IMG/VR virus record: IMGVR_UViG_3300042289_000986
Location: 62,001-126,000 of that record
Direction: 5' to 3' (one strand)
Length of the DNA: 64,000 nt
This document shows positions 7,886 through 22,284 of this stretch, one piece after another (the first letter of the stretch is position 1; each line of letters opens with the position of its first letter). Under the pieces are notes generated by a model, which did no database searches, was not told where the DNA came from, and saw nothing but the letters and a program-made list of their open reading frames with translations. A program made the translations under genes and the position numbers.

Positions 7886-7921
7886 ATTTGACTTTTAAAA
7901 TATTTTTAGTATATTCTTATT

Positions 7922-8083: not shown

Positions 8084-8090
8084 TTTTTAT

Positions 8091-8162: not shown

Positions 8163-8167
8163 CTTTT

Positions 8168-8241: not shown

Positions 8242-8275
8242 CTTGACTTCTTTGTTTTGAAAATAAATTAATCAT

Positions 8276-8491
8276 ATGATTAATGCAGAAGTAAGAATAC
8301 CAAAACGAGGAGATGCAAAACTTAATTTAGATAGAGCACTTCAAAGACTAAAAACAAAATTAATGATCGAAGGAACTATGGATACTGTTCGATCAAAAAG
8401 AGCTTTTGAAACACCTAAAGAAAGAAGTGAAAGAAAACTTAAACAAAGATTAAAAATGATCAAGAAAAAATCTTTGACAAAAAGTAGATAA
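8276..8491 (+). CDS. rpsU: 30S ribosomal protein bS21
   Basis: V-x-I...LDRALQRLKTK..EG.M..VRSKRAFETPKERSERK pattern; 71 aa, basic. Confidence 0.88.
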   Translation: MINAEVRIPKRGDAKLNLDRALQRLKTKLMIEGTMDTVRSKRAFETPKERSERKLKQRLKMIKKKSLTKSR

Positions 8492-8509
8492 ACGTCTATA
8501 AATGATAAT

Positions 8510-9064
8510 GTGAAAACATTAATCATTCACCCAAAAGATACAAGTACTGTTTTTTTAGAACCAATCTACGAAAAGATTGATAACAAAACAGTTATCCAAA
8601 AAGATTGTTCCTTTGAACAACTTATTAATCTCATTGAAACACACGATAGAATTATGATGATGGGTCATGGTTCTCCTGATGGATTATTTTCTATTGGTAA
8701 TTTTGATGAGGGGTATGTTATTGATAAAAATATTGTGGATTTTTTAAAAAAGAAAAAAGAATGTTTTTATCTTTGGTGCAACGCTGATAAATTTGTTGAA
8801 AAATATCAATTGAATGGATTTTATTCAGGAATGTTTATTTCCGAAGTTAATGAGGCAAATTTTTGTAATGTGAATACCGATCAAAAATTGGTTAATGAAT
8901 CAAATTATTCTTTTTCTAAAATTGTTTCTAAATGGGCAAATTATGATATGAAAAACTTGTATGATAATGTAAAGATGGAATATAGCAAACTTGCAGAGTT
9001 TAATAATGTAGCTCTTTATAATTTAAAAAGACTTTATTATCAAACTAGCATAAATATTATTTGA
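8510..9064 (+). CDS. Hypothetical protein (caspase/CHAT-like GHG motif)
   Basis: IMMMGHGSPDG and LWC; TTGACA promoter upstream. Confidence 0.45.
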   Translation: MKTLIIHPKDTSTVFLEPIYEKIDNKTVIQKDCSFEQLINLIETHDRIMMMGHGSPDGLFSIGNFDEGYVIDKNIVDFLKKKKECFYLWCNADKFVEKYQLNGFYSGMFISEVNEANFCNVNTDQKLVNESNYSFSKIVSKWANYDMKNLYDNVKMEYSKLAEFNNVALYNLKRLYYQTSINII

Positions 9065-9097
9065 CAAAAGGAAAGATCTTTGATATGTTAGTAATAC

Positions 9098-9400
9098 GAT
9101 TTGGTGGCAGTTATAACCAAATCAGGATAAAAATTTTTGCTTGTTGGTGAGTTGGGGTTTTTATCTGAGCTAGGGGAGCCAAGCTGCGGTAAGCTATGAT
9201 CCTATGCATTTATACAATACAAGCTATGGACGAAGTTGTGTTCTGCGGATTGCGGAGCCTTCGTTGAGTAGTGGGACAAATTCTAGAATAAAACCCACTA
9301 AACACCAATTCGGGTTAATCTTGTAAGAGGAGCCGACTTTCCGTGGTTGTATAAACATGGCTGAGATTAGTCCTGAATCGTCGCGGGTAAACGATTCACA
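9098..9400 (+). ncRNA. Unassigned structured ncRNA (about 300 nt)
   Basis: Own promoter TTGACA(9061)-N17-TATGTT; GC-rich; no ORF; multiple nested helices. Confidence 0.7.
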
Positions 9401-9466
9401 TTTTCAGTAAATATTATTGTTATTTTTCTCGCGGAAACTTAGAGGTTTTTGCGAAAGGAGATAACA

Positions 9467-9571
9467 ATGACATTAATAATAGGAACAATAGTCTTAGCAT
9501 TTAACATTAAACTTGCATGTTTAGGTTATTTGGTAATGATTACAGAAATGTTTGGCAGACACACTCGATAA
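9467..9571 (+). CDS. 34-aa hydrophobic peptide with strong SD (not in track)
   Basis: AAAGGAG-ataaca-ATG; MTLIIGTIVLAFNIKLACLGYLVMITEMFGRHTR. Confidence 0.55.
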   Translation: MTLIIGTIVLAFNIKLACLGYLVMITEMFGRHTR

Positions 9572-9596
9572 TGAATGATTCTGACTAACGTTTTTG

Positions 9597-9630
9597 AAAC
9601 AAGGGTAGAGAAATCTACCCTTGTTTTTTT
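9597..9630 (+). terminator. Intrinsic terminator
   Basis: AAACAAGGGTAGA-GAAA-TCTACCCTTGTTT then T-run. Confidence 0.85.
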
Positions 9631-9657
9631 ATAACTTAATGATATATTGTTTACATG

Positions 9658-9744
9658 GGTGCGATGGCTGAGTGGTCTAAAGCAGGAGTTTACTAAACTC
9701 TCGAAGTTTAATCGCTTCCGTGGGTTCGAATCCTACTCGCACCG
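9658..9744 (+). tRNA. tRNA-Ser(ACT)
   Basis: Acceptor GGTGCGA/TCGCACC, G73, long variable arm, loop TT-ACT-AA. Confidence 0.88.
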
Positions 9745-9750
9745 TTTTTT

Positions 9751-10164
9751 ATGGAAATAACAGAATACGATCCGTTTAAAAAATCAATTGTTCCTTATGG
9801 CTTAGATAGGGGTGCTCCTAAATTTGATATAATTGAAACAAAAACTAAAAAAGATCAGCACTACAATCTTGCAGTGCAACAAGCACAAAAAGAATTTGAA
9901 AATCTTAAACAAATAGCTGATGTAATTAATAAACAAGCTCAACAAATAAAAGAGCGTTTAGAAATTACAGAACTTGTATATAACGCCGAACGTACCTTTA
10001 CCCCTGTTGTTGGAGCCAACTACTGGCTTATAAAAGATACAAAAAAAAATAATATAAAAATTGTTGTTTTGGGTCCGAAAGAATGGGCTACAAAACATCC
10101 AGAAAATTATGAATATATTTCAGAAGTTCAATTTTTAGCTAATGGACTTTGGGAAAAGTTGTGA
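9751..10164 (+). CDS. DUF2452-like protein
   Basis: PYG..RGAPKF, coiled coil, F.PVVG.NYWL, W at C-end. Confidence 0.6.
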   Translation: MEITEYDPFKKSIVPYGLDRGAPKFDIIETKTKKDQHYNLAVQQAQKEFENLKQIADVINKQAQQIKERLEITELVYNAERTFTPVVGANYWLIKDTKKNNIKIVVLGPKEWATKHPENYEYISEVQFLANGLWEKL

Positions 10165-10394
10165 TAATATATCAATATGAAAAAGTATGCTATACATATT
10201 AAATTCAAAGGACGTAATTTTAAATTAAACATTTTACCAAAAGATGATGATAGATTTGATTTGGAAATGGAATTTAAAGGTTCTCTATCTGGAGAAGATT
10301 TTCAAGATTTAAGAAAATATCTTGTTGATGAAGGATATGTAGATGCTGCCAGAAGTTGGATAGAAGGAGATAGTTATCTGGCAAATTAATTTTT

Positions 10395-10485
10395 GGGTAG
10401 ATGGCTGAGTTGGTCTAAGGCGTCCGACTTGAAATCGGAAGTGGGGGAAACTTCACCGTGGGTTCGAATCCTACTCTACCCGCCA
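10395..10485 (+). tRNA. tRNA-Ser(TGA)
   Basis: TCCGA-CT-TGA-AA-TCGGA; long V-arm; GCCA end. Confidence 0.93.
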
Positions 10486-10490
10486 TTTAA

Positions 10491-10564
10491 GGAGTCATAG
10501 CTCAATTGGTCAGAGCACCGCCCTGTCACGGCGGGGGTTGCGAGTTCGAGCCTCGTTGACTCCG
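10491..10564 (+). tRNA. tRNA-Asp(GTC)
   Basis: CCGCC-CT-GTC-AC-GGCGG. Confidence 0.93.
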
Positions 10565-10787
10565 TTTTTGAATAAGTATAACATATGTTTGAAAGCGGAA
10601 ACTCATTTGAAGATAAAACATCTGATGCTTTTATAAATGAAGCAATAAAAGAAACGTTAGATAATTTAAAAATTAACCCACCAAAATTCCAAGCGGTTTT
10701 TGATGACGGTTCAACTGTAGATTTTGAAATTTACGAAGAAGCTATGGGTTTTTTACATAAAAACCCAAACTGTAAAGTATTTGTAAA

Positions 10788-11219
10788 ATGAAATTTAAAA
10801 TTTATTTTGAATCAAAAAATTTTAATTTAAATGTTTATTATAAACTTTTAAATAATTTTTTGAATTCACAAAAAAACTGGAACTTAAAAAAAATTGAAAA
10901 TGATCCATATAACCAAATGGAAATTGTTGATGAGAATGGAAAAAGGTATGGGAAAATTGAAAGAGATTATGATCCTGAAACAAAAACATTATATTTAAAT
11001 CATATCGGTGTGGGGTTTGATGAAAACGGTCAAAGAATGAAAGGTTTGGGGTTGGTTGATTTAATTTATAATTTTGAAAAACAAATCGTGCAAATGTATG
11101 GAATTGAAAACGTTTGCACAGAACCAGTAAATGATATTACAGATAAAAAATTCAAAGAAATATACCAAGATTACAAAATAGAGCAAAAAGACAATTATAT
11201 TTGCGCCTCGATTAAATAA
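10788..11219 (+). CDS. Possible GNAT-fold protein
   Basis: LYLNHIGV..QRMKGLGL resembles acetyl-CoA motif A; leader MKFKIYFES. Confidence 0.4.
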   Translation: MKFKIYFESKNFNLNVYYKLLNNFLNSQKNWNLKKIENDPYNQMEIVDENGKRYGKIERDYDPETKTLYLNHIGVGFDENGQRMKGLGLVDLIYNFEKQIVQMYGIENVCTEPVNDITDKKFKEIYQDYKIEQKDNYICASIK

Positions 11220-11228
11220 GTATAAGAT

Positions 11229-11957
11229 ATGAGAAAAGATGATATTAGCATTAACGAAGCTTACTTAAAAGTTTATCAAAATTTAGAAGAAGGCATGTTT
11301 GATGTCGCTAAAGCCAAAATTGGTGGTGCAATTAAAGGTATTGCGCCTGGTAAAAGATTAGGCGCAATGGCAGCAAAAGGATTAGGAAAAGCTGCTGGTA
11401 TGCTGAGTCCAACAGCAGGAAAAATGTTACAACAAACAGGTGAGCGTTTACAAAAATCTGCATCAGAAGCTGGTATGGCTGGTAAAATAAACTCAATCAT
11501 GAAATCTCATACAGGCAGCATTCAAAAGATTGCTCAAGAAGTCATTAATGATTTAAACAAATTAGATTTAAATCCTGAAAATCTTACAGCCGAACAATTT
11601 GCTTCCCAAATAACACAAGATTTCACATCTTATTTAAGCTCACAGCTTCCAGAATCGCAAGTTGATGTTTCTGGTATTGGAATTGGATCAACAGTTAAAG
11701 ATAAAGAAGGAAACGCTTATCGTTATACTTCTCCTTCAGAAGTTGATCCAGCAACAGGCAAACTTAAACCAGCAACTGATAGTGCCAACAAAGAAGGTGC
11801 TAAATGGTATGAACTGAGTGGTGGTGGCAAATCAGCATATGAGATTGCTGGGGACAGCGATGAAATGCAAAAGAAAATTTCTATTGCTTTCAAAAAACAA
11901 GGCCAATCTCAGCCAGAAACACCAGAAGAAGAAAAACCAAAAATGCCCGAATTTTAA
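11229..11957 (+). CDS. Putative head-internal protein with KDxxxxxEAY leader
   Basis: MRKDDISINEAYLKVYQNLEE-G; Gly/Ala/Lys-rich helix; TAAGTA 6 nt upstream. Confidence 0.6.
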   Translation: MRKDDISINEAYLKVYQNLEEGMFDVAKAKIGGAIKGIAPGKRLGAMAAKGLGKAAGMLSPTAGKMLQQTGERLQKSASEAGMAGKINSIMKSHTGSIQKIAQEVINDLNKLDLNPENLTAEQFASQITQDFTSYLSSQLPESQVDVSGIGIGSTVKDKEGNAYRYTSPSEVDPATGKLKPATDSANKEGAKWYELSGGGKSAYEIAGDSDEMQKKISIAFKKQGQSQPETPEEEKPKMPEF

Positions 11958-11999
11958 TTTATCTTGCTTTCTTTGATTTTTCTAGTAAGATAATAATAT

Positions 12000-12076
12000 C
12001 GGGATGTGGCTCAATTTGGTAGAGCATCTGCTTTGGGAGCAGAGGGTTGCAGGTTCAAATCCTGTCATCCCGACCA
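12000..12076 (+). tRNA. tRNA-Pro(TGG)
   Basis: CGGGATG/CATCCCG; loop TT-TGG-GA; ACCA. Confidence 0.94.
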
Positions 12077-12170
12077 TTTATTCTTGACAATATTTTGTTT
12101 TTATAATATTGTCTATGGATGAAAAATGAAGTTATTTATGATTTAAGAACTTAAAAATGTAACAAAATCT

Positions 12171-12821
12171 ATGTTAATAAAACATTACATCAAAGAAATA
12201 AACTCTGATATTTTTGCGGTTGTTATTAAAAACAAATATGATCGTGCCATGCTTTTTTGTCGCGCCCAAGAATATTATGAAAGTCCAAGTCCTAAGTTTC
12301 GTGGAAAACAATTTTCTATTTGGGACTATATGAAATGGTATGATGAACAACATGGAAGAGGATTTAGTTATGCAAATGATTGGTCTGGTTTCAACATTCC
12401 TTTGAGACAAATAAACGATTGTTATAACAAATTAAACAAGATAGAGTCTCCTTATGATAAACTAATGTATGATATTTTGGCTGTTTTGAATTTAAAATAT
12501 CTTGCGACAAATGAATCATACGTGATTGGTTGTGGTGACACAAAAGGTGATATCTTTAAACATGAAGTCTGTCATGGTCTTTATTACACCAATAAAGAAT
12601 ACAAAAAGAAAATGGATGCTTTGACTAAAGGACTTCCAAAAAAATATTACGAAGCATTCAAAAAAAATATTTTAAAAATGGGATATGCCGCAAAAGTCGT
12701 TGATGATGAGATACAAGCATATCTTCAATATGGATATGAAAATGAAGATTTTGGAAAAGGGGTTGACATTAGTGTTCGTATCGAATATAGTAGTCTTTAT
12801 AAACAACAATCAAAATTATGA
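12171..12821 (+). CDS. Hypothetical protein with HExxH (zincin-like) motif
   Basis: FKHEVCHGLY; downstream DEIQAY. Confidence 0.5.
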   Translation: MLIKHYIKEINSDIFAVVIKNKYDRAMLFCRAQEYYESPSPKFRGKQFSIWDYMKWYDEQHGRGFSYANDWSGFNIPLRQINDCYNKLNKIESPYDKLMYDILAVLNLKYLATNESYVIGCGDTKGDIFKHEVCHGLYYTNKEYKKKMDALTKGLPKKYYEAFKKNILKMGYAAKVVDDEIQAYLQYGYENEDFGKGVDISVRIEYSSLYKQQSKL

Positions 12822-15300
12822 AAGCAAAACATCAATTCAAATATACATACGACGAATTTTGTGAAAACTTTTCACCAGTTGAAGTCATTTTTGATATACC
12901 AACAGGAGAAGTAACTATTACTCAAATGCTTTGGAATTTTGAGTGTTACTTGAAAGCTTGTGGCTTTGTCTTTGATGGACATTTGGAAGTTGTACCAGAA
13001 AGTGGTTATGATGTCATCGATGATACAGACTATTGTTGTATGGGTGATACTGATGGTTTAGAAGATGAACAATATATTATACCTCCAACAGTTAAATCTC
13101 CTTCTTATTGGGATAATCAACCGTCAAGCATTTGTTCTTCTGATAAACACAACATAACAGCGGAAGATCCTAAAAAGTTTTTTCCTCAACATGATAGCGG
13201 TCTTTCTACTACTTCTAGTTCTTTAGATAATGAGTGGACTAAAGCAGAAAAGAAACTCAAAGAATGGAATGAGGGAATTGCTAAACTTGATAACGAACAA
13301 AAAGAGAAAGCTAATGAAGATGCTCGTAAAATGTCTGATCTTCATTACGAAGCCACAAAAGAAGTGGTTAAGAATAAATGGGTTCATGGTATGTGCAATC
13401 CACCTTCACCTGATTGGAAAAAGAATAAATGAAGAAACCTACACAAAAACAAAAGATCGAAATGTATGAAAAATTCTTACATAAGATCAATATGTGTGTA
13501 ATGTGTTGTAATGATACAGGAGTTAGAGAACTTGTACACAATGCAGATGATTGGTCTTATATGCATCGTGTAGGAAACGGAGAACCATCTGAAAGAGAAC
13601 AACAAAGATTGATTACAAAAGCATTTTGGCAACTTTGCGATACTCCAGAATCAGATAAAGAAGTCGAAGAAAGACAAAGAATATATACTGAAAAGAAAAA
13701 AGAAAGAGAAGAAGCTGCTATAAATTTATGAAAAAGAAAAATAATAAATTCCAATACAAACCATATCCATCAACGGATGTAAGATCACCATATTATGATT
13801 CAAAATCAACAATTACGGAGGAACATTACACACTAGACGGAGATCATCCCGAAGATCGAATCTATAGAGATAAAGAATTTATCAACAGACTTCAATCACA
13901 TATTGATATAGTATATGATATTTTAGCTATGGACTTAAAACTTAACGAAAAGGGCAAAGAATGGCTTTTTGATTTTGTTTATAACGAAGAAGAAAATATT
14001 GAGTTTGAAGACTTCTTGGCAAAGTATAAGGTCAAGTATAAAGATCTAGTTACTTCAAATAGCTGGTATTATAATCAATAAAATATGATAACAAAACTAG
14101 TAGCATTATTCGCAATAGTCACCGCATCTATTGGATTGAGTGTAGCAACTCTCATTTATGGATGGGGATTAGAACCTAAAAGCTGGACCGCAATTATATT
14201 CTTTGGTATAGTTGGTCAAGTTATTGTAAGCAGTCTTTATAGAAAAATTATGGAAGATGACAAATGAAATACAGAATTAAAGAAGAAATAAAGATGGGTA
14301 AACATTACTTTTACCCTCAATATAAAAAATTCCTATTCTGGAAGAATATGACTGAACGTGATGTTAAGGATGTAGTTGTATACCCTCACCTAAAAGGAGC
14401 TAAAGATCATATTGAAATCTTTAAAGAGAGACTAAACAAGAAAAAGAAGCTTGATAGTTACAAACAAGTATTGTATCATTCCTATATATCATAGATGAAA
14501 TATAAATTTGTAGAAACTCAAGGTTGCACGGCATTTGGCTTCACTGTCAATGATGAAGACCTTGCTAATGTTTCCAAAGAGAAACAAAAAGAAATTATTG
14601 ATTATCTTTGTGAAAAAATGAAAGAAGAAATTGATAAAGGAACTGTTTTGTTTTCAGATATTGTTGGAGTTTTTCAAGAAACGGATCATGGTTCTGAAAA
14701 AGAACCTTGCGATCAATGCTATGATACTGTAAGCTGGACTATATGGGAGATTTAACTATGAATACAAATGAATATGTAAAAATTCTAGAAGAAGAATGTG
14801 GCAAAAACCAAGCACACAAGAAAAAAAGTATCAAAAAAAGTACAGGTATAAATGCTCTTTACATACCAGAAAAACCAAAGCCAGATTACAGTTGGACGAT
14901 TAAAGATCGTTTAAAAAATACTTTTATAATTCTTAATAACCGTTGGGTGTTTTTGAAAAACTACAACCCTCTGGATTTTAGATCTTATGAAGAAGAATAT
15001 AACCCATATGGGTTTGATAAGATATATACTAAATTTCACAGAACATCGACTCCATTAACTCGTTTTAAACTTTTTTGGGGTGAATTTGAAACTACTTTAA
15101 AAAATATTAAAGATGGTTTTTTATATACCCCACTCGCTGTTAAACATTATCAAAAAAATAAAGAAAGAATATCTTGGTTTGAAGAAAATCTTTCAAAGAT
15201 GTTTGCCGATAAGTTAGATGTTGATGTCAGAAAAGTATTGCATAAACATGGGTATGATCTTGACGGACAAGGTAGAATTTGTTATAAAGTAAAAGAATGA
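12818..15300 (+). other. Run of seven small abutting hypothetical ORFs (12818, 13429, 13728, 14085, 14264, 14495, 14743)
   Basis: Overlapping or abutting start/stop codons on the same strand, typical of phage early genes. Confidence 0.6.
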
Positions 15301-15467
15301 AAATTATAATTTTATCTTTACTTTTAACTGGATGCACAACGCTTACAGATAAAATGGTAAAACCAGCTATTAATGAAGATAACTATTGGAAAACTCCTTG
15401 TATTTGGGATGGAACTATTTTAAAAAAACCTTGGCTCAAAAAAGATATAACTACAAATGAGCGATAA
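15297..15467 (+). CDS. Small lipoprotein (56 aa, not in track)
   Basis: MKIIILSLLLTG-C lipobox; ATGA overlap with the upstream gene. Confidence 0.6.
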   Translation: MKIIILSLLLTGCTTLTDKMVKPAINEDNYWKTPCIWDGTILKKPWLKKDITTNER

Positions 15468-15588
15468 ATTAAAACAAATTATGGAAGAAATCAGTAAATT
15501 AACAATTACTGAACTTAATGAACTTATTAAAAGTTTAGAACCTATCTTTACACCAGAAAATAAAACAGATGAACACGGAAATAATTGA
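15457..15588 (+). CDS. 43-aa protein resembling the N-terminal dimerisation domain of ribosomal protein bL12 (not in track)
   Basis: MSDKLKQIMEEISKLTITELNELIKSLEPIF fits the bL12 NTD pattern I-x-E-x-I-x-x-L-T-x-x-E-L-x-E-L-x-K-x-L-E-x-x-F. Confidence 0.7.
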   Translation: MSDKLKQIMEEISKLTITELNELIKSLEPIFTPENKTDEHGNN

Positions 15589-15823
15589 CGAACAATATAA
15601 AACACATCTTGTTAAAGAGTATGAGCGTCTTAAAGATGAAGTTGAATTATACAAAAAAGTTAATCTTAGTTTAAGGAAAGAACTTACGATGTGTGAAAAA
15701 CTTATTGAATTAAACATAAAAGATCTTTGGAACATAGCCGATCAAAGAGATTGGTATTATGAAGAATATCAAAAATTAAAAAGAAAAGAGGAGCTTAAAC
15801 AAGCTGCTTGGAGAAGAAAATAG
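15569..15823 (+). CDS. Coiled-coil hypothetical protein
   Basis: Heptad-rich ORF. Confidence 0.5.
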   Translation: MNTEIIDEQYKTHLVKEYERLKDEVELYKKVNLSLRKELTMCEKLIELNIKDLWNIADQRDWYYEEYQKLKRKEELKQAAWRRK

Positions 15824-15828
15824 ATTGA

Positions 15829-16203
15829 ATGGATTTATTATTTGTTTACGGTACTTTAATAGAAAATAAAAAAACAAAAATACATAAACTTTTAAACAAA
15901 AATAGTTTGTATATATCTAAAGCTGTTTTTCAAGGTAAACTTTATGATACAGGAAAATATCCAGCAGCAATAAAATCTAATAAAAAAAATGACATGGTTA
16001 TCGGAAATATAATAAAAATATTAGATTTAGAAATATTAAAAAAAATAGACGAATATGAAGGATTAGAGTATAAAAGAAATATAACGACATTAGTAGCTAA
16101 TAAAAAAAATATAAAAGCTTGGATTTATCTTTATTGTAAATCGATTGAGAAACATAAAAGAATAATATCGGGTAATTGGTTAAAATATAAAAAAATAGAT
16201 TGA
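15829..16203 (+). CDS. Gamma-glutamylcyclotransferase (AIG2-like) family protein
   Basis: LFVYGTL, GKLY..G.YP, DEYEG..YKR, AWIY. Confidence 0.85.
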   Translation: MDLLFVYGTLIENKKTKIHKLLNKNSLYISKAVFQGKLYDTGKYPAAIKSNKKNDMVIGNIIKILDLEILKKIDEYEGLEYKRNITTLVANKKNIKAWIYLYCKSIEKHKRIISGNWLKYKKID

Positions 16204-16246
16204 CTGATTAAATATATCTGGTAAATTAGATATAGTTCTTTGAAAA
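16200..16246 (+). promoter_or_regulatory. Sigma70-like promoter followed by boxA-like element
   Basis: TTGACT-N16-TAAATT then GTTCTTTGAAAA (16235-16246). Confidence 0.6.
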
Positions 16247-16257
16247 ATTTAAAAAAG

Positions 16258-16597
16258 TTTAATGTTGGCTAGTCGAACCAGCATTAAAAATCCTGATGCG
16301 AAACCCATCAGGTAACAAGGTATGCAACTCTACCTCTCTATACAACGGATACGTGTCCGTGTTCTGATCAGACATATAGAGTCCCATAGTGGATAACTTA
16401 AAAGTGAAAAAAAAGAGTGTAGGTTCTGGGTAAACCGAAGCTAGATTGGCTAAAACCCTTGTCCCGAAAGGGGTAAAGGTTCTGTGTTCTGATTCTAAGC
16501 ATTATGGCCCAATCGAACAACGATTGGCTTAGATAATGCCAGCAGATTAAGGCGCAACTTAATCGTCAGTCTGGTCCTGTTTGCGACAAAAACACCA
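16258..16597 (+). ncRNA. Unassigned structured ncRNA, 5' domain/RNA A (about 340 nt)
   Basis: GC-rich, no ORF, more than 8 helices with multibranch closure, ends ACCA + U-rich spacer. Confidence 0.7.
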
Positions 16598-16607
16598 ATT
16601 TTTATAA

Positions 16608-16789
16608 TCCGAGAATCCTAACGAGATTCTAGTCAGTACCCACTGATGAATAGAAGCTGTTCGTTACAGTAATAAGGGGGATGGTTGCCGTGACTCGCAT
16701 ACGGTGTGCGTAAGTTGACTCGTCTGAAAAGATAGGGAGTCCGTGCTTGATTCCGAAAGGAAAATGATGGTATGTAAAGACAGCCGAAA
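16608..16789 (+). ncRNA. Unassigned structured ncRNA, 3' domain/RNA B (about 180 nt)
   Basis: Hairpins AGAATC/GATTCT, TCAGT/ACTGA, GCTGT/ACAGT, GACTC/GAGTC; two GAAA tetraloops. Confidence 0.65.
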
Positions 16790-16814
16790 TTTTTTAATTC
16801 TTTTATAATTTAAT

Positions 16815-16888
16815 TCCTTGGTGGGCTAACGGTAAGCCAACAAACTGTTAATTTGTTCATCATGCTGGTTCGAATCCAGCCCAAGGAG
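16815..16888 (+). tRNA. tRNA-Asn(GTT)
   Basis: TCCTTGG/CCAAGGA; ACAAA-CT-GTT-AA-TTTGT. Confidence 0.92.
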
Positions 16889-16970
16889 CTTTTATTAAAT
16901 GTATAAAAATGGTGTTATACTAAGCCAAACCATTATATAAAATGTTACATATAATATGTAAGTATTATAT

Positions 16971-17525
16971 ATGAGTATAAATGCAGATCGTGTTAAAGCT
17001 TGGAGAAAAGATACTAAAAATTTAATTGTTGAAGGGTTTGGAGGAAAATGTTGTATATGTGGTTATGATAAATGTGAAGAAGCTTTTGATATACACCATA
17101 TAGATCCTACTCAAAAGACATTATCTTTTGGAGGAATAAGAGCTAATCCTAAACAATGGAAAATTTTATTAAAAGAGTTAGAAAATTGCGTTTTATTGTG
17201 TGCTAACTGTCACAGAGAATATCATGCAGGTAAAACTAACATCCCAAAAAATATTCCAAAATTTGTAGATTTAAAAGAAAAAAGAAAAATAAAAACATAT
17301 TGTCCAATTTGTAATAAGCAAAAAGCAAATTATCTTATAACTTGTTCAAAAACTTGTGCTGCAAAAAGAAAATCTCAAATCGAATGGGATAATTTTGATT
17401 TATATGATTTACACGTAATTCAAAAATTAAGTAATCTTAAAATAGGAAAAATAGTTGGTGCTTCTGATGTTGCAGTTATAAAAAGATTAAAAAAATTAAA
17501 AATTTATCAACTTCAAAATAATTAG
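16971..17525 (+). CDS. HNH endonuclease with Zn fingers and C-terminal HTH
   Basis: CCICG..FDIHHIDP..CVLLCANCHREYH; CPIC..CSKTC. Confidence 0.85.
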   Translation: MSINADRVKAWRKDTKNLIVEGFGGKCCICGYDKCEEAFDIHHIDPTQKTLSFGGIRANPKQWKILLKELENCVLLCANCHREYHAGKTNIPKNIPKFVDLKEKRKIKTYCPICNKQKANYLITCSKTCAAKRKSQIEWDNFDLYDLHVIQKLSNLKIGKIVGASDVAVIKRLKKLKIYQLQNN

Positions 17526-17540
17526 TGTATAATTACTATT

Positions 17541-17660
17541 ATGAAAAAACTATTATATACTATTATCTTTGTTAGTATTTGTTTACTTGTTTCTGGATGT
17601 TATAGCACAAAATCTATGGGCGATTCAGAAAAAGCAGACAAATATCTTTTTATCTATTAA
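17541..17660 (+). CDS. 39-aa lipoprotein (not in track)
   Basis: MKKLLYTIIFVSICLLVSG-C; TATAAT 7 nt upstream. Confidence 0.55.
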   Translation: MKKLLYTIIFVSICLLVSGCYSTKSMGDSEKADKYLFIY

Positions 17661-17666
17661 CTTAAA

Positions 17667-17918
17667 TTATTTTTGATTACAACTATCTAAAAGTTCTTTA
17701 TAAACTCTGTTTATATTTTCCATAGCTTGACAGAGCATAGATATGGAACTTGGATGATTAATAGCATTAGAATATTCTTTTATTTCTTCAGCATTTGCTG
17801 AAATGGTCATTCTTAATCTAATTTCTTTAGGTGATATAGAATTTTTTTTATTTGAGTCGCAACAAGAAGCAACTGTTTCATATAATTTTTCTAAACTGGT
17901 TTGGTCTTTTTTCGCCAT
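17667..17918 (-). CDS. Small protein with KDQ leader
   Basis: MAKKDQTSLEKLYE; TAAATA 5 nt upstream. Confidence 0.55.
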   Translation of the reverse strand: MAKKDQTSLEKLYETVASCCDSNKKNSISPKEIRLRMTISANAEEIKEYSNAINHPSSISMLCQAMENINRVYKELLDSCNQK

Positions 17919-17926
17919 AATAATAT

Positions 17927-18493
17927 TTATACAATTAAATCACTAACAATCAAAATTAGAGTTTTTGCTCTTGTTTCAAATTCTTCATCAGCACAAGGAG
18001 TTTCCAGTGTGCAATATGGAATGTTTCTTCTTCTCAATGCACGTTCTAAAGTTCCCTTATATGGTTGCTGACCATTTGAAATAACACCTTGATCTGTAAC
18101 ATCCCCATGTGCTTTTACTGCCAGTTGGATTTTACTTTTCATTAAAGCACCTTTTACCTTGTCTTCAATTTCTGGAGAACAATAAGCATAAACTCCATCT
18201 ACTTCATCATCTTCGTGTAAAGAAATAACAAGTGTTGGATTCAGTTCTTCAATTTTAGAAAGAAGTCTGTCTTGTAAATCGTTTTGATCATCAGTGTCAA
18301 AATGACGATTGGGATCTTTTCCATTCAATCTTCTTTTCTTAGTTTTATTTAAATTAGAATAAACCTTGACGTTTGGGAGATTTTTAAAATAGTTTGCAGC
18401 AATATTTCCAGCAGGTTCATCACCATGCAAACCACTAACAATCACAAAAACGTTTGGGTTTAAAAGATTTTCTACTAATGCGTCAAATTTCAC
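17927..18493 (-). CDS. M14-family Zn carboxypeptidase/deacylase (AstE/MpaA-like); start reassigned to GTG 18493
   Basis: GLHGDEPAG, DPNRHF, ISLHED, TLE; TAAGTA 5 nt before GTG. Confidence 0.8.
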   Translation of the reverse strand: MKFDALVENLLNPNVFVIVSGLHGDEPAGNIAANYFKNLPNVKVYSNLNKTKKRRLNGKDPNRHFDTDDQNDLQDRLLSKIEELNPTLVISLHEDDEVDGVYAYCSPEIEDKVKGALMKSKIQLAVKAHGDVTDQGVISNGQQPYKGTLERALRRRNIPYCTLETPCADEEFETRAKTLILIVSDLIV

Positions 18494-18689
18494 TTTAATA
18501 CTTATTTTCTTATAGACAAAAAGCCAAGTTGTGATAAAATAAAAAAAATGAAAAAGTACTGCATATTTCCTGATGAAACTAAAATAGAACTTCATTCAAT
18601 TTTAGATGTAACAGATACACAAACATATATCTGTTATTATGATGAAAATCTTCCACAAACACTTTGGGTTCCGAATGATTTTTTGAGCA

Positions 18690-19703
18690 ATGATTAAACA
18701 CGTTGATGTTATTGTCGGTCTTGCTTGGGGGGATGAAGGCAAGGGTAAAATTTCAAGTGCAATGGCCAAAGACTATGATATGGTCTGTCGTTGGAATGGT
18801 GGACCAAATGCTGGTCATACTGTTTATTTGGATGGGAAAAAATACAAAACCCATCTGATTCCTTCTGGTGTTTTTCATGGAAAGAAATCTGTTATCGGTC
18901 CAAACTGTGTTCTGAATATTGAGAAGTTTTTCAAAGAAATTGAATATCTAAAAGAAAATGGATTCGATACATCTTTGGTAAAAGTTCATCCAAATACTCA
19001 TGTGATTACGGATGCACACATTGAATATGATCTGAAACATTTGAAACCAAAACTTGGAACTACAGGTCAAGGTATTGCTCCTTGTTATGCAGACAAAGCA
19101 AATCGTGTTGGTATTCAGGTTAGTAAAGCAAACTTCAATCCCTTAAAAGATTTTATTTGGGATGGAAAATTAGAAGGAAAAATTCTTTGTGAAGGTGCTC
19201 AAAGTATTTGGTTGGATATCAACTACGGTGATTATCCTTATGTGACAAGCTCTGAAACATTTCCTCACAATGCTTGTTCGCTTGGATTTTCACCCAAGAA
19301 AATTCGTGATATTATTGGTGTCGCTAAAATCTATGATACCAAAAGTGGAGTTGATCCGTTGTTTCCAGAATGTCTTTGGAGTGATGTAAAACTAAACAAG
19401 TTAATTGAACTTGGTCAAGAATTTGGTTCTACTACAGGAAGAAAAAGACTTGTGAATTGGTTGAATTTTGGAAGATTAAACAATGCTATTAATCTTTCAG
19501 GTTCAACCAAAGTAATCATCAATAAGTGTGATGTTTTTGAAAAAGTTGGAATCTTCCGAATTAATAATTTTTACGAAACATCTTTGGAAACAAATTCTTT
19601 TGATCAGTTAAAAGACATCATTAAAAAGTCTTTGGTAAATCAAAACATCAATGGATTAAAACCAAATAATATTATTTTTTCTGGTGATCAGACGAATATT
19701 TAA
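18690..19703 (+). CDS. purA: Adenylosuccinate synthetase (short form)
   Basis: GLAWGDEGKGK, GGPNAGHT, GTTGQGI, EGAQ, YPYVTSS, EFGSTTGRKR. Confidence 0.95.
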   Translation: MIKHVDVIVGLAWGDEGKGKISSAMAKDYDMVCRWNGGPNAGHTVYLDGKKYKTHLIPSGVFHGKKSVIGPNCVLNIEKFFKEIEYLKENGFDTSLVKVHPNTHVITDAHIEYDLKHLKPKLGTTGQGIAPCYADKANRVGIQVSKANFNPLKDFIWDGKLEGKILCEGAQSIWLDINYGDYPYVTSSETFPHNACSLGFSPKKIRDIIGVAKIYDTKSGVDPLFPECLWSDVKLNKLIELGQEFGSTTGRKRLVNWLNFGRLNNAINLSGSTKVIINKCDVFEKVGIFRINNFYETSLETNSFDQLKDIIKKSLVNQNINGLKPNNIIFSGDQTNI

Positions 19704-19704
19704 A

Positions 19705-20196
19705 TTAATCTTCAAAAAAACTTCCGTGCATATCCCATGCTATTTTGTCTAGTGCTGTTGAATCCATTTTTATAAAACTAGTGTTTTTTAACAAATCAAC
19801 TAAAAGCTTTTGAATTAACTCAAACTCATTGTCTAAATTTTCATAGGGAGATAATGAATATTTTTTAGAGTAATATTCTAAGACATTAGGATTTTTAAAT
19901 GCTCTATCAATAAATTTATCTAAAAGTTTTTTTGCAATTACATCCAGATTATCGCCTTCTTCGGTAAGAAAATTTTGATATCCGAACATAACAGATGGAT
20001 TTAAAACGGCTTCGTTAGAATCGTTTTCTTCCTCACGATCATCTTGCTGTGTATATAAGTTCGACTTATCGAGTTTATCTAAATTTCCTGCCGACATTTT
20101 CATATCCGAATCGGGTAATTCTTCGTTTGTATTAACAACTTCTTTTAAAACTTTTTGATAAGCATCTTCTAATAAAATTTGATCTTTGCTTTTCAT
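19705..20196 (-). CDS. Acidic protein with KDQxLLExAY leader
   Basis: MKSKDQILLEDAYQKVLKE; TAAATA upstream. Confidence 0.65.
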   Translation of the reverse strand: MKSKDQILLEDAYQKVLKEVVNTNEELPDSDMKMSAGNLDKLDKSNLYTQQDDREEENDSNEAVLNPSVMFGYQNFLTEEGDNLDVIAKKLLDKFIDRAFKNPNVLEYYSKKYSLSPYENLDNEFELIQKLLVDLLKNTSFIKMDSTALDKIAWDMHGSFFED

Positions 20197-20231
20197 TATG
20201 ATATATTTACTCCAAATTTAATCAATTTAAT

Positions 20232-20444
20232 ATGATAAATATGAATATAGTGAACGTGGCAGATACTTCTTTATATAAAGAATTCTTAGCAATGAGAGAA
20301 GAAGTCATGAAACACAAGTGGTATGAATCCGAAAAAGCTGGATATGATATCGGCTTCGCAAGAGCAGTGATTGATTGGACAATGAGGTTTAAAACTCAGT
20401 GGATTAAAAATAGAAAAAAAAAAATTAAGATTCTTTGTATCTAG
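20232..20444 (+). CDS. DUF4032-like small protein
   Basis: SLYKEFLAMREEVMKHKWYESEKAGYDIGF..AVIDW. Confidence 0.7.
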   Translation: MINMNIVNVADTSLYKEFLAMREEVMKHKWYESEKAGYDIGFARAVIDWTMRFKTQWIKNRKKKIKILCI

Positions 20445-20700
20445 GTGAATGGGAAAGATCAATTATAATTTCTCGCATTTTATCAAATTTTTGATATAAT
20501 GGCTTGAGATCTTCAGAAGTAAAAGCATCTTTTAAGTTTTGATCGTTTAAAAGAGACTCTACTGTATTTAAAGCTTTAAAAAAAGCTTCTTTAGCAAGTC
20601 TTTTTGATCTAGCTTTTCTTAAAAAATAATCGGAACTATATTCTTTTAATATTTCATTTTCATATGCTTCGGATAACATATTTAAATCTTTTCTATTCAT
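20425..20700 (-). CDS. Small protein with KDxxxLxEAY leader
   Basis: MNRKDLNMLSEAYENEILKE; TAAATA upstream. Confidence 0.55.
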   Translation of the reverse strand: MNRKDLNMLSEAYENEILKEYSSDYFLRKARSKRLAKEAFFKALNTVESLLNDQNLKDAFTSEDLKPLYQKFDKMREIIIDLSHSPRYKES

Positions 20701-20759
20701 TATTTAATATTTACAAAAAATACTTGTATCTTTTTAAAAATATGCCATAATTATATTCT

Positions 20760-21287
20760 ATGGTTAAAACATATATCAAACTAATGGTAGTTGGAATTAT
20801 TGCATTGACTTCTACAGTCATGGCTGGTTCTGACTTGAAATCAAGCAAAGAAGTCGTTGTAGATTCTTGCCGCTTTCGCAGCAATGAACTCCAATTAGAC
20901 CTCTTTGGTTCTGGTGCGTTCTATAAGCAAGGTAAACCTGCTTGGGGTGGTGGCGTTGGTGTCAACTACTTCTTCCTCAAGTATGTTGGACTTGGCGTAG
21001 AACAAACCTTGGTTGGTCGTGAAGATGTTGCTGAATGGGGAACATTCGGTAACTTGTTTCTTCGCTATCCAATCTGTTCTTGGAACGTAGCACCTTATGC
21101 CGTTGCTGGTCTTGGTGCTCTCTACGGACAAACCAAAGCAATCCTTGCTGGAACTGTTGGTGGCGGTCTTGAGTATCGCATCACTGACAATATTGGCATC
21201 TTTGCAGATGCTCGTTGGCTTTACAATGCCAACGTCAGCAACAGTGGAGCAGTTGTTGCTCGCACTGGTATCAAATTTGCTTTTTAA
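20760..21287 (+). CDS. Small outer-membrane beta-barrel (OmpA/OmpW/Ail-like)
   Basis: Sec signal (..VMA-G), amphipathic strands GGGVGVNYF, PYAVAGLG, VGGGLEYR, terminal GIKFAF. Confidence 0.85.
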   Translation: MVKTYIKLMVVGIIALTSTVMAGSDLKSSKEVVVDSCRFRSNELQLDLFGSGAFYKQGKPAWGGGVGVNYFFLKYVGLGVEQTLVGREDVAEWGTFGNLFLRYPICSWNVAPYAVAGLGALYGQTKAILAGTVGGGLEYRITDNIGIFADARWLYNANVSNSGAVVARTGIKFAF

Positions 21288-21300
21288 TTAAAGTAAATCA

Positions 21301-21371
21301 TGGCTCGTAGTGTAACGGTAACACCAGAGAATTTGGATCTCTTATTCATAGTTCGAATCTATGCGAGCCAG
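21301..21371 (+). tRNA. tRNA-Gln(TTG)
   Basis: TGGCTCG/CGAGCCA; AGAGA-AT-TTG-GA-TCTCT. Confidence 0.88.
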
Positions 21372-21375
21372 TTTT

Positions 21376-21458
21376 GGGTAAGCGGTAACGTTGGAGAGTT
21401 ACTTCAGACTGTAAATCTGACGCCATTGGCTTAGTAGGTTCGAATCCTTCCTTACCCA
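21376..21458 (+). tRNA. tRNA-Tyr(GTA)
   Basis: TCAGA-CT-GTA-AA-TCTGA; V-arm GCC/GGC. Confidence 0.92.
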
Positions 21459-21475
21459 TTTTCTTTGAAATTTTA

Positions 21476-21566
21476 GCTGGATTAGTGTAACTGGAAGCAC
21501 CGACAGTTTTATAAACTGTGTGCCCTAGATGAGGGCCGAGCGCGGGTTCAATTCCCGCATCCAGCA
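21476..21566 (+). tRNA. tRNA with TAT (Ile) anticodon and long variable arm
   Basis: GCTGGAT/ATCCAGC; ACAGT-TT-TAT-AA-ACTGT; V-arm GCCCT-AGATG-AGGGC; A73. Confidence 0.85.
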
Positions 21567-21572
21567 TTTTTC

Positions 21573-21592
21573 GCACAGTTAGCTCAGTGGTA
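21573..21592 (+). pseudogene. 5' fragment of a tRNA gene, truncated by the HNH gene
   Basis: GCACAGT-TAGCTCAGTGGTA after the usual T-rich spacer, no continuation. Confidence 0.7.
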
Positions 21593-21998
21593 TGTTTAAA
21601 TTCTTAATCCTATATCTTTTCTTATATGTGGATCTTTTAGAATTTTTTCTGTTTCTGCTACAATAAGTGTCTGTCTGTGAATGACAATTTGGACAAAGCA
21701 ATCTAATATTATTAGGATAGTTATTATCGGAATTACCATCAATATGATCTAAATGTAATGATATGTCTTTATTTTTCCAATTTGATATTTCACAAACCTC
21801 ACATTTATATCCTCTTTTAAATTGTAAAAATTTTTTTAAAGTAGCAGCTTGTGAACATTTATTAGATTCTATTTTAGGAATAGTTATATTGTTAAATGTA
21901 TAGTTTCCTTGACAAGTATTGTTACAATACTTTCCAAAACTTTTACTTTCATCGTATTTTATTTCTTTTTTACAGTTTAAACAAAAAGAAGTTTTCAT
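21579..21998 (-). CDS. HNH homing endonuclease
   Basis: CLNC..CNNTC; CEVC..LHLDHIDGN..N...NIRLLCPNCHSQT. Confidence 0.9.
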   Translation of the reverse strand: MKTSFCLNCKKEIKYDESKSFGKYCNNTCQGNYTFNNITIPKIESNKCSQAATLKKFLQFKRGYKCEVCEISNWKNKDISLHLDHIDGNSDNNYPNNIRLLCPNCHSQTDTYCSRNRKNSKRSTYKKRYRIKNLNIPLS

Positions 21999-22004
21999 AT
22001 ATCA

Positions 22005-22048
22005 TATTTATCCGAGCTATTATACATAAATAAGAGGTCGGATAAATA
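22005..22048. repeat. Inverted repeat carrying outward-facing TAAATA boxes
   Basis: TATTTATCCGA ... TCGGATAAATA (11-bp perfect arms). Confidence 0.7.
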
Positions 22049-22093
22049 AAATATAGTTGATTAATAAGATATTTTAATATAATATATAAATAT

Positions 22094-22167
22094 GGGAGGT
22101 TGTTGTAATGGTAGCGATTCGCATTTACACTGCGACAGCAAAGGTTCGATTCCTTTACCTCCTACCA
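22094..22167 (+). tRNA. tRNA-Val(TAC)
   Basis: TCGCA-TT-TAC-AC-TGCGA; ACCA end. Confidence 0.88.
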
Positions 22168-22170
22168 TTT

Positions 22171-22241
22171 GGGGGATTAGTTAAGTGGTATAACTCCTGA
22201 TTTGCATTCAGGTGTCACCAGTTCGACTCTGGTATCCTCCA
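22171..22241 (+). tRNA. tRNA-Ala(TGC)
   Basis: G3.U70; CCTGA-TT-TGC-AT-TCAGG. Confidence 0.92.
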
Positions 22242-22284
22242 CTTTTTTCTTGTCATTATTTAAACATCTGCTAGACTTAAAAAT

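What the first reader, a model, noticed from the sequence alone, without database searches (positions are those of the whole stretch)
15457..15588. Hidden 43-aa ORF resembling only the N-terminal domain of ribosomal stalk protein bL12
Seen: MSDKLKQIMEEISKLTITELNELIKSLEPIFTPENKTDEHGNN, too short for the ORF track and overlapping both neighbours. Known: the first ~30 residues of bL12 dimerise and bind uL10; an Ala-rich hinge and the C-terminal domain then recruit IF2, EF-Tu and EF-G. The match stops where the hinge would begin and no CTD follows. Inference: a headless bL12 could occupy uL10 sites or heterodimerise with host bL12 and throttle translational GTPase recruitment, or interfere with L10-L12 operon autoregulation. 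Phage bL12 homologues are known; I do not recall an NTD-only form.
Basis: partly seen in the sequence, partly recalled or inferred. Interest (0 to 1): 0.88.

Follow-up and report, generated by a model that had tools for sequence, protein, structure and literature searches.

The report
Phage micro-protein mimicking bL12's anchor domain
A roughly 211-kb uncultured phage encodes a conserved 43-residue protein that is only the anchoring and dimerising domain of ribosomal stalk protein bL12, without the part that recruits translation factors, so it probably docks on the host ribosomal stalk as a headless copy.

Summary
Window 15457-15588 (+) is a real 43-codon gene.

- **Homology:** it passes Pfam's curated cut-off for Ribosomal_L12_N (28.1 bits against 25). 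It aligns without gaps, from Met1 to Phe31, with cellular bL12. It ends in a short acidic tail exactly where the Ala-rich hinge would begin.
- **No CTD:** no C-terminal domain is encoded anywhere in the 64-kb window or beside the gene in relatives.
- **Not a pseudogene:** 32 protein clusters (29-60 aa) share a near-invariant 33-residue core. pN/pS is 0-0.23 with synonymous sites near saturation. The gene persists while its neighbours are shuffled or replaced.
- **Structure:** AlphaFold2 predicts the two-helix hairpin. The top PDB match is the L12 NTD chain of the L10-L12(NTD) complex, 1ZAV.
- **Genome context:** a distant T4-like jumbo myovirus that also carries bS21, 14 tRNAs, a tmRNA and an RNA ligase.
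- **Prior work:** the main survey of viral ribosomal proteins searched only for the bL12 C-terminal domain. IMG auto-labels some members "L7/L12". I found no description of an NTD-only form.

The best reading is a headless stalk mimic that occupies uL10 sites or pairs with host bL12. Binding and its effect on translation are untested, and the host is unknown.

The parts
15457..15588 (+). Gene for the 43-aa headless bL12 (L12N) micro-protein, stop codon included
   Evidence: ORF and translation. Pfam PF16320 above the gathering cut-off. Family of 32 short proteins. pN/pS 0-0.23 over the first 33 codons.
15463..15495 (+). Helix 1 of the predicted two-helix hairpin (residues 3-13)
   Evidence: AlphaFold2 model md002e3971bf2; mean pLDDT 93-97 over residues 1-30.
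15505..15549 (+). Helix 2 (residues 17-31), ending at the conserved Phe31 that closes the NTD in cellular bL12
   Evidence: AF2 model. Ungapped alignment with cellular bL12 through Phe31. Foldseek top hit 1zav_U, TM 0.80 on the target, rmsd 2.2 A.
15550..15585 (+). Variable, net-acidic, predicted disordered tail (residues 32-43) that replaces the hinge and CTD
   Evidence: In the family the tail is 5-13 residues long (one 29-residue outlier) and always net negative. pLDDT falls to 63 and then 43. No similarity to the bL12 hinge or CTD.
15448..15450 (+). In-frame TAA two codons upstream, which fixes Met1 as the N-terminus
15297..15467 (+). Upstream 56-aa ORF with a lipoprotein-like signal; its stop overlaps the L12N start by 11 nt, an arrangement typical of translational coupling
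   Evidence: In all seven genomic contexts the L12N start overlaps or abuts the stop of the preceding same-strand ORF, whichever gene that is.
15569..15823 (+). Downstream 84-aa ORF overlapping L12N by 20 nt. It is not conserved in relatives and is not part of the L12N function.
   Evidence: No homologue in L003-L009; absent in L004 and L005.
8276..8491 (+). Context: phage bS21 homologue, a second ribosomal-protein-derived gene in the same tRNA-rich region
   Evidence: Pfam PF01165 31.8 bits against a cut-off of 27. NCBIfam S21p 26.6 bits, just under its cut-off of 28.95. The relative L007 also carries bS21 about 5 kb upstream of its L12N.

Best explanation
The gene encodes a stand-alone copy of the bL12 N-terminal domain. 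This is the 30-residue two-helix hairpin that in bacteria dimerises and clamps onto the C-terminal helix of uL10. It was captured from a cellular rplL with its native start codon and is kept by the phage without hinge or C-terminal domain. In the infected cell the micro-protein most likely enters the exchangeable bL12 pool. There it would form homodimers that occupy bL12 sites on uL10, or heterodimers with host bL12. Either way the number of factor-recruiting C-terminal domains per ribosome falls, and the stalk-dependent steps (IF2-driven subunit joining, EF-G steps) are retuned. It probably acts alongside the phage's own bS21, tRNAs and tmRNA as part of a ribosome-remodelling programme. Shown: the gene is real, is under strong purifying selection, is homologous to the bL12 NTD, forms a complete domain, lacks hinge and CTD, and is conserved across a phage clade. 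Inferred: that it binds uL10 or bL12, and the direction and size of any effect on translation.
For: - **Homology:** Pfam L12_N is above its curated cut-off. The best PDB sequence hits are the L7/L12 NTD chains. After the family itself, the exhaustive profile search finds mainly bL12.
- **Domain completeness:** the match covers positions 3-29 of the 30-residue NTD chain 1zav_U, deposited as the L10-L12(NTD) complex.
- **Fold:** AF2 gives a hairpin with helices 3-13 and 17-31 at pLDDT above 90.
- **Shared invariant positions:** K4, L15, T16, E19, E22, L23, K25, E28 and F31 are invariant in both the phage family and the cellular bL12 sequences aligned with it. Twelve of the first 31 residues are hydrophobic, which is more than a monomeric hairpin can bury. 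Exposed charged residues are also invariant within the family. Both features fit a protein whose whole surface is interface.
- **Selection:** pN/pS is 0-0.23 with pS up to 0.9. The core is 82-100% identical where homologous neighbouring proteins have dropped to 40-63%.
- **Always headless:**
- **Translation-oriented genome:** bS21, 14 tRNAs, a tmRNA and an Rnl1-type RNA ligase.
- **Published phenocopy:** E. coli ribosomes with one bL12 dimer fewer double the generation time, slow IF2-dependent subunit joining 2-fold and slow EF-G steps 1.6-fold, while EF-Tu dipeptide formation is unchanged (PMC3299993).
Against: There is no direct evidence of binding. No multimer prediction could be run, and the host and its uL10 are unknown (searches gave no signal). 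The end of helix 2 differs from the cellular consensus: Pro29-Ile30 stands where the aligned cellular bL12 have acidic/Lys residues. That could change partner specificity. A general brake on translation would also slow phage protein synthesis, so the benefit must be selective or timed, and nothing here shows that. From my own knowledge (Oleinikov et al. 1998), single-headed bL12 dimers still support protein synthesis, so heterodimerisation alone may have a mild effect. The family is confined to one phage clade (8 IMG/VR contigs). Foldseek's E-value for the 1ZAV match is not significant, because the domain is so small.
Confidence: 0.55

Rival explanations
1. The hairpin has been co-opted as a small dimerisation or adaptor module that binds a phage protein, or a non-ribosomal host protein. 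It never touches the ribosomal stalk.
For: The phage-specific Pro29-Ile30 and the acidic tail differ from cellular bL12. The gene lies among many small genes of unknown function. Mizuno et al. report bL12 CTD domains embedded in large non-ribosomal phage proteins, so ribosomal domains do get reused.
Against: The positions shared with cellular bL12 include exposed charged residues as well as the hydrophobic core, which fits the ancestral partners being retained. No neighbouring gene is consistently present to serve as a partner. No other L12_N-containing protein is encoded in the window.
Confidence: 0.18
2. It acts off the ribosome. By complexing free uL10 or free bL12 it perturbs L10(L12)n-mediated translational autoregulation of the rplJL mRNA, or late 50S assembly, and so shuts down production of new host stalks.
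For: The L10(L12)4 complex is the repressor of rplJ-rplL translation (review PMC10931766). From my own knowledge, bL12 attaches to uL10 through its NTD, so an NTD-only protein might form such a complex.
Against: This needs the same untested binding to uL10. The host's leader and regulatory system are unknown. A phage with a short infection cycle gains little from blocking the synthesis of new ribosomal proteins.
Confidence: 0.12
3. It has a protective or stabilising role. The headless copy keeps uL10 sites occupied, or shields the stalk base, when host bL12 is depleted, modified or targeted during infection. This preserves the ribosomes for phage use and does not inhibit them.
For: The genome invests in maintaining translation (tRNAs, tmRNA, RNA ligase, bS21). 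The N-terminal Ser2 is nearly invariant in the family. From my own knowledge, that is the position acetylated in E. coli L7. PMC3299993 notes that N-acetylation is thought to stabilise L12 dimers on L10.
Against: A stalk position without a CTD cannot recruit factors, so occupancy alone does not restore function. No stalk-directed host defence is known to me, and no PADLOC hit was found nearby.
Confidence: 0.1
4. It is a decaying remnant of a captured rplL gene, or a chance ORF with a coincidental resemblance, and has no function.
For: The ORF is very short, has no Shine-Dalgarno sequence, and overlaps both neighbours.
Against: Purifying selection is strong (for example 11 synonymous changes against 1 nonsynonymous versus L006). 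The 33-residue core is near-invariant in 32 clusters. The gene is kept while its neighbours are replaced. The genome as a whole lacks Shine-Dalgarno motifs (8 of 50 genes). There is no CTD remnant in any frame or in any relative. Independent gene callers predict it.
Confidence: 0.03

Closest known systems
Isolated L7/L12 N-terminal domain, as crystallised with L10 (PDB 1ZAV/1ZAW/1ZAX) and in 1DD3/1DD4 of Thermotoga maritima
   Same: Same domain boundaries (about 30 residues) and the same predicted two-helix hairpin. It is 48% identical over 31 aligned columns and is the top sequence and fold match in PDB.
   Different: The crystallised fragment is a laboratory truncation of a full-length ribosomal protein. 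Here the truncated form is the natural, selected gene product of a phage, and it carries its own acidic tail plus Pro29-Ile30 near the end of helix 2.
Phage-encoded bL12 domain proteins (Mizuno et al. 2019, PMC6375957)
   Same: Virus-encoded derivative of bL12 under purifying selection, proposed to interact with host ribosomes.
   Different: Those proteins carry the C-terminal, factor-binding domain (PF00542), often inside larger proteins, in podoviruses under 80 kb. This one is the opposite half (PF16320 only), stands alone, and is in a jumbo myovirus. PF16320 was absent from that survey's seed-domain table and from its supplementary files.
Phage-encoded bS21 (pelagiphage HTVC008M; freshwater Bacteroidetes phages, PMC9723584)
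   Same: A small, exchangeable ribosomal-protein homologue in large aquatic phages with about 31% GC and many tRNAs. A bS21 gene is present in this very window and in the relative L007.
   Different: bS21 is a complete ribosomal protein that can substitute functionally. L12N is a partial protein that can only fill a binding site. Neither paper mentions an L12 NTD gene.
Mycobacterium phage 32HC bL9 homologue (Mizuno et al. 2019)
   Same: A precedent for a phage keeping only the ribosome-anchoring N-terminal domain of a two-domain ribosomal protein.
   Different: In that case the C-terminal domain is replaced by unrelated sequence in an 86-aa protein. Here almost nothing follows the anchoring domain.
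E. coli JE105 (uL10 lacking its last bL12-dimer site; PMC3299993)
   Same: An engineered reduction in the number of functional bL12 heads per ribosome, which is the expected net effect of a headless competitor.
   Different: A genetic deletion in uL10, not a trans-acting competitor. It shows what the phenotype could be and says nothing about whether the phage protein causes it.
Full-length bL12-like gene in a 735-kb huge phage (LR756501)
   Same: A phage-borne relative of rplL.
   Different: It covers residues 2-101 of a cellular bL12 and so includes CTD sequence, at 31% identity. It is not truncated.

Membership tests
Pfam Ribosomal_L12_N (PF16320), the L7/L12 dimerisation domain | Profile score at or above the curated gathering cut-off | tested here: met
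   28.1 bits against 25, E 1.7e-6. Nearly all family members carry precomputed PF16320 hits.
Pfam Ribosomal_L12_N (PF16320), the L7/L12 dimerisation domain | Two-helix hairpin fold | tested here: met
   AF2 gives helices 3-13 and 17-31 with pLDDT above 90. The Foldseek top hit is 1zav_U, TM 0.80 and 2.2 A, though its E-value is not significant for a 30-residue domain.
Pfam Ribosomal_L12_N (PF16320), the L7/L12 dimerisation domain | Dimerises and binds the C-terminal helix of uL10 | not testable with these tools
   No multimer prediction was available and the host uL10 is unknown.
Ribosomal protein bL12 (rplL; NCBIfam TIGR00855 equivalog) | Whole-protein score at or above the equivalog cut-off | tested here: not met
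   19.1 bits against 84.4, matching profile positions 5-32 of 125 only. The control P0037 scores 123 bits.
Ribosomal protein bL12 (rplL; NCBIfam TIGR00855 equivalog) | Flexible Ala/Gly-rich hinge after the NTD | tested here: not met
   A 5-13-residue acidic Lys/Glu/Asp/Asn tail stands in its place.
Ribosomal protein bL12 (rplL; NCBIfam TIGR00855 equivalog) | C-terminal factor-binding domain (PF00542) | tested here: not met
   No Pfam hit. No CTD similarity in six frames of the window or in the flanks of the relatives.
Ribosomal protein bL12 (rplL; NCBIfam TIGR00855 equivalog) | Encoded next to rplJ (uL10) | tested here: not met
   The neighbours are small phage ORFs that vary between relatives. 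The cellular control P0037 does follow uL10.
Virus-encoded ribosomal protein homologues (sensu Mizuno et al. 2019) | Ribosomal-protein domain encoded on a bona fide viral genome | tested here: met
   The same contig carries a tail sheath, T4-type terminase, baseplate and tail-tube genes. There are eight IMG/VR contigs. The pattern scan found none in 185,579 cellular species genomes.
Virus-encoded ribosomal protein homologues (sensu Mizuno et al. 2019) | Purifying selection on the viral copy | tested here: met
   pN/pS 0-0.23.
Virus-encoded ribosomal protein homologues (sensu Mizuno et al. 2019) | Incorporation into ribosomes | not testable with these tools
   Needs expression and ribosome purification.
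Dominant-negative micro-proteins (a small single-domain protein that titrates a multi-domain relative; concept recalled from my own knowledge) | Consists only of the interaction domain of a larger multi-domain protein | tested here: met
Dominant-negative micro-proteins (a small single-domain protein that titrates a multi-domain relative; concept recalled from my own knowledge) | Forms non-productive complexes with the target and reduces its activity | not testable with these tools
   Requires biochemistry.

The most novel reading that the evidence does not exclude
This phage clade makes a natural headless stalk protein. It would be a trans-acting subunit mimic that displaces or pairs with host bL12 on uL10 and lowers the number of factor-recruiting heads. 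Together with the phage's own bS21 it would convert host ribosomes into a phage-tuned form. That would be the first natural regulator found to act on the bacterial ribosomal stalk by domain mimicry.
Probability: 0.4. Interest if true: 0.8.

Novelty: new variant of a known kind. Interest (0 to 1): 0.62.

Why it matters
Viral ribosomal-protein genes described so far are either complete exchangeable proteins (bS21) or factor-binding domains (the bL12 CTD). A conserved, strongly selected gene that keeps only the anchoring half of bL12 points to a different strategy: occupying a ribosomal binding site without supplying its function. If the protein binds uL10, it would be a natural, chemically synthesisable 43-residue probe or inhibitor of the stalk. 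It would also offer a direct way to ask how the number of bL12 copies tunes initiation and translocation in vivo. Finally, it shows that domain-level surveys seeded only with PF00542 have missed a class of viral ribosomal-protein derivatives.

Tried and rejected
- **Cultured-phage collection:** megablast of the 5-kb region gave no match. tblastn of the 43-aa protein gave only chance hits at E of 5 or more.
- **PHROGs:** no meaningful family (best E 0.59).
- **The search for related loci with the bare 43-aa protein:** I solved this by using a neighbouring gene and then the family alignment.
- **Donor and host inference:**
  - The first scan of cellular genomes found no family member.
  - The second found cellular bL12 N-termini at 48-64% identity, scattered over Clostridia, Patescibacteria, WOR-3 and others.
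  - The phage bS21 has no match in cultured phages.
  - The terminase is at most 39% identical to Rhizobium and Agrobacterium T4-like phages.
- **Promoter and terminator scan around the gene:** fewer promoter-like sites than in shuffles, so uninformative.
- **Possible wider family through the divergent 42-aa protein P0046:** only two sequences, on contigs under 1 kb.
- **Frameshift fusion of L12N to the overlapping downstream ORF:** considered and rejected. The downstream ORF is non-homologous or absent in relatives.
- **The 61-aa ORF on the opposite strand (15420-15605) as the real gene:** rejected because of the synonymous/nonsynonymous pattern in the + frame.
- **Defence or anti-defence link:** no PADLOC hit for L12N or for the upstream ORF. 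The downstream 84-aa ORF has only weak hits (best E 0.0026).
- **Literature:** searches for an NTD-only phage bL12 found nothing. Two searches failed on term syntax and one was unproductive.

Full report
**1. The observation**

An in-frame TAA two codons upstream fixes the N-terminus. The ORF overlaps the upstream ORF 15297-15467 by 11 nt and the downstream ORF 15569-15823 by 20 nt.

**2. Is the resemblance to bL12 real?**

- Pfam Ribosomal_L12_N (PF16320) scores 28.1 bits against a gathering cut-off of 25. The E-value is 1.7e-6, with residues 4-28 on profile positions 1-25 of 48.
- phmmer against PDB ranks the Thermotoga maritima L7/L12 NTD chains first (1zav_U and 1dd3_C, E 0.003).
- A profile of the family was searched exhaustively against 1.84 billion representative proteins and gave only 20 hits at E<=1e-3. 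These were four family representatives, then mostly full-length bL12 or bL12 N-terminal fragments, together with two repetitive multi-stretch proteins. P0037 is a true cellular bL12. It follows a uL10 gene, has both Pfam domains and scores 123 bits on NCBI's bL12 equivalog.
- The phage protein aligns with these from Met1 to Phe31 without a gap, at 55-64% identity. Similarity ends exactly where the cellular Ala-rich hinge starts.

**3. Is it a gene, and is the short form the selected form?**

- The search for homologous proteins returned 32 protein clusters of 29-60 aa. In their alignment, residues 1-33 are invariant or nearly so. The tail that follows is 5-13 residues long and always net acidic, with one 29-residue outlier.
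- At the DNA level the first 33 codons show pN/pS of 0-0.23, while synonymous sites approach saturation. Examples are 11 synonymous against 1 nonsynonymous difference versus L006, and 16 against 7 versus L007.
- The immediate neighbours differ between relatives. There are insertions in L003 and L005 and entirely different genes in L006, L007 and L009. The L12N core stays 82-100% identical where homologous neighbouring proteins have fallen to 40-63%.
- In every context the start codon overlaps or abuts the stop of the preceding same-strand ORF. Several independent pipelines call the gene.
- The lack of a Shine-Dalgarno motif is a property of the whole genome. Only 8 of 50 large genes have even a weak one.
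- Full-length bL12 queries find nothing beyond residue 31 in any frame of the window or in the flanks of eleven related loci. No close relative with a full-length gene appeared in the any-length search. The recent-pseudogene alternative is therefore rejected.

**4. Structure**

AlphaFold2 with the family alignment gives mean pLDDT 83.5, with 93-97 over residues 1-30. It predicts helices 3-13 and 17-31 and a disordered tail. Foldseek against PDB ranks the L12 NTD chain of the L10-L12(NTD) complex first: 1zav_U, TM 0.80 normalised to the target, 2.2 A, 48% identity. The E-value (3.9) is not significant for so small a domain.

**5. What genome is this?**

- The window carries a contractile-tail sheath, a T4-type large terminase, T4 baseplate and gp19 tube proteins, a baseplate lysozyme/spike, a class II ribonucleotide reductase, PhoH, dUTPase and dCMP deaminase.
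- It matches IMG/VR contig IMGVR_UViG_3300042289_000986 (211.6 kb) at 100% over the loci compared.
- There is no nucleotide match to cultured phages. The best terminase identity is 38.7%, to Sinorhizobium phage phiM9. This is an uncultured, distantly T4-like jumbo myovirus.
- It is heavily invested in translation. It has 14 tRNAs and a full-length tmRNA, an Rnl1-type RNA ligase and a bS21 homologue at 8276-8491. The relative L007 also has bS21 near its L12N.
- The family lies on 8 IMG/VR contigs. It is in none of 185,579 cellular species genomes, within the limits of the pattern scan.
- Host and donor could not be inferred.

**6. Mechanism**

From established knowledge, the bL12 NTD has two known activities: dimerisation and binding to the C-terminal helix of uL10. 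The CTD is the common docking site for IF2, EF-Tu, EF-G and RF3 (review PMC10931766; introduction of PMC3299993). The phage protein corresponds residue for residue to the 30-residue NTD chain deposited in the L10-L12(NTD) complex 1ZAV.

Three features fit the ancestral partners being retained:

- The hydrophobic positions of both helices are kept.
- Charged positions that are invariant in the cellular bL12 sequences aligned with it are kept too (K4, E19, E22, K25, E28).
- Exposed residues are almost invariant within the family, as expected if nearly the whole surface is interface.

The most likely mechanism is therefore a headless stalk mimic. Homodimers would occupy uL10 sites, or heterodimers with host bL12 would form, and fewer CTDs would remain per ribosome. 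Published work shows what that can do. E. coli ribosomes with one bL12 dimer fewer give a generation time of 46 minutes against 24. IF2-dependent subunit joining is 2-fold slower and EF-G steps are 1.6-fold slower, while EF-Tu dipeptide formation is unchanged (PMC3299993).

Binding, exchange onto ribosomes and the net effect are all inferred. The report's Rival explanations section lists the rivals: a non-ribosomal adaptor, off-ribosome interference with rplJL autoregulation or assembly, and a protective role.

**7. Comparison with what is known**

- Mizuno et al. 2019 found phage bL12 as the C-terminal domain (Pfam Ribosomal_L12, PF00542), often embedded in larger proteins of podoviruses under 80 kb.
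- That study seeded its searches with 106 Pfam domains. The seed table lists PF00542. PF16320 appears neither in the main text nor in the held supplementary files. The survey therefore could not have found an NTD-only form.
- Chen et al. 2022, on bS21 phages, do not mention L12.
- Full-text searches for L12_N in phages found nothing.
- IMG's automatic annotation labels several family members "ribosomal protein L7/L12" and others "hypothetical protein". The sequences are therefore public but not interpreted.
- By NCBI's equivalog model the protein is not a bL12 (19.1 bits against 84.4). It is a member of the L12_N domain family only.

**8. Verdict**

The finding is real and unusual. It is a new variant within the known phenomenon of virus-encoded ribosomal-protein homologues. 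Interest is moderate to high: the hypothesis is sharp and easy to test with a synthesisable peptide. It is limited by the narrow distribution of the family, the unknown host and the absence of any binding evidence.

**9. Side observation**

A 611-nt ORF-free stretch lies downstream, at 16204-16814 (+). It is conserved across relatives, richer in GC than the genome, and has the hallmarks of a large structured RNA that Rfam does not classify. In some relatives it directly follows the L12N stop codon. It deserves its own follow-up.

Noticed in passing
window 16204-16814 (+); also L004:4830-5477, L005:5343-5976, L013:3295-3892: A 611-nt ORF-free element directly 5' of a tRNA gene. It has 39% GC against about 30% for the genome and is 75-90% identical across relatives, better conserved than the flanking protein genes. 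It shows long invariant blocks, discrete hairpin-sized insertions, several GAAA-loop hairpins and a long-range closing helix. Of 154 predicted pairs, 8 show compensatory changes among only 4 sequences. The MFE z-score is -3.2 on the + strand and -1.9 on the - strand. No Rfam family matches at E<=1. In L004 and L005 it starts at the L12N stop codon. It is a candidate novel large structured RNA.
   Followed up: partly
window 8276-8491 (+): A phage-encoded ribosomal protein bS21 homologue (71 aa; Pfam 31.8 bits against a cut-off of 27) directly after tRNA-Gly. It has no match in cultured phages at E<=1e-3.
   Followed up: partly
window 3194-3653 (-): A full-length tmRNA gene on the phage genome (Rfam RF00023, 138 bits, model positions 1-374). 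ARAGORN predicts the tag peptide ADEEMLLAA.
   Followed up: no
window 7237-22242 (+): Fourteen tRNA genes in clusters. Two have unusual anticodons: tRNA-Ser(ACT) at 9658-9744 and tRNA-Ile(TAT) at 21476-21566.
   Followed up: no
window 15297-15467 (+): A 56-aa ORF upstream of L12N whose N-terminus looks like a lipoprotein signal (a hydrophobic stretch ending in L-T-G-C). It is conserved at 87-95% in close relatives. In L003 and L005 it is separated from L12N by two inserted ORFs.
   Followed up: no
window 15589-16203 (+): The 84-aa ORF and the gamma-glutamyl cyclotransferase-like gene (GGACT, 15829-16203; Pfam E 2e-21) are absent from L004 and L005. There the L12N gene abuts the conserved RNA element, so this segment is an insertion or deletion polymorphism.
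   Followed up: partly
window 16971-17525 (+) and 32832-33419 (+): Two HNH endonuclease genes. The first lies just downstream of tRNA-Asn. Both are probably homing endonucleases.
   Followed up: no
window 18690-19703 (+): An adenylosuccinate synthetase (PurA) homologue of only 337 aa against a 416-position profile (E 1e-82, two matched stretches). It may be a shortened auxiliary metabolic gene.
   Followed up: no
window 29728-30816 (+): A T4 Rnl1-type RNA ligase. This fits a tRNA-repair function alongside the tRNA set.
   Followed up: no
whole window: Shine-Dalgarno-like motifs are nearly absent upstream of the large genes (8 of 50 by a simple motif count). This resembles the SD-independent initiation reported for Bacteroidetes and their bS21 phages (PMC9723584), but the host was not established.
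   Followed up: partly
L019:272-400 (P0046) and P0050: Two other very short proteins (42 and 37 aa) with bL12-NTD-like sequence. P0046 has the same 'LEPxF plus acidic tail' ending at about 35% identity. Only two P0046-type sequences are known, on contigs under 1 kb. They may be divergent headless forms.
   Followed up: partly
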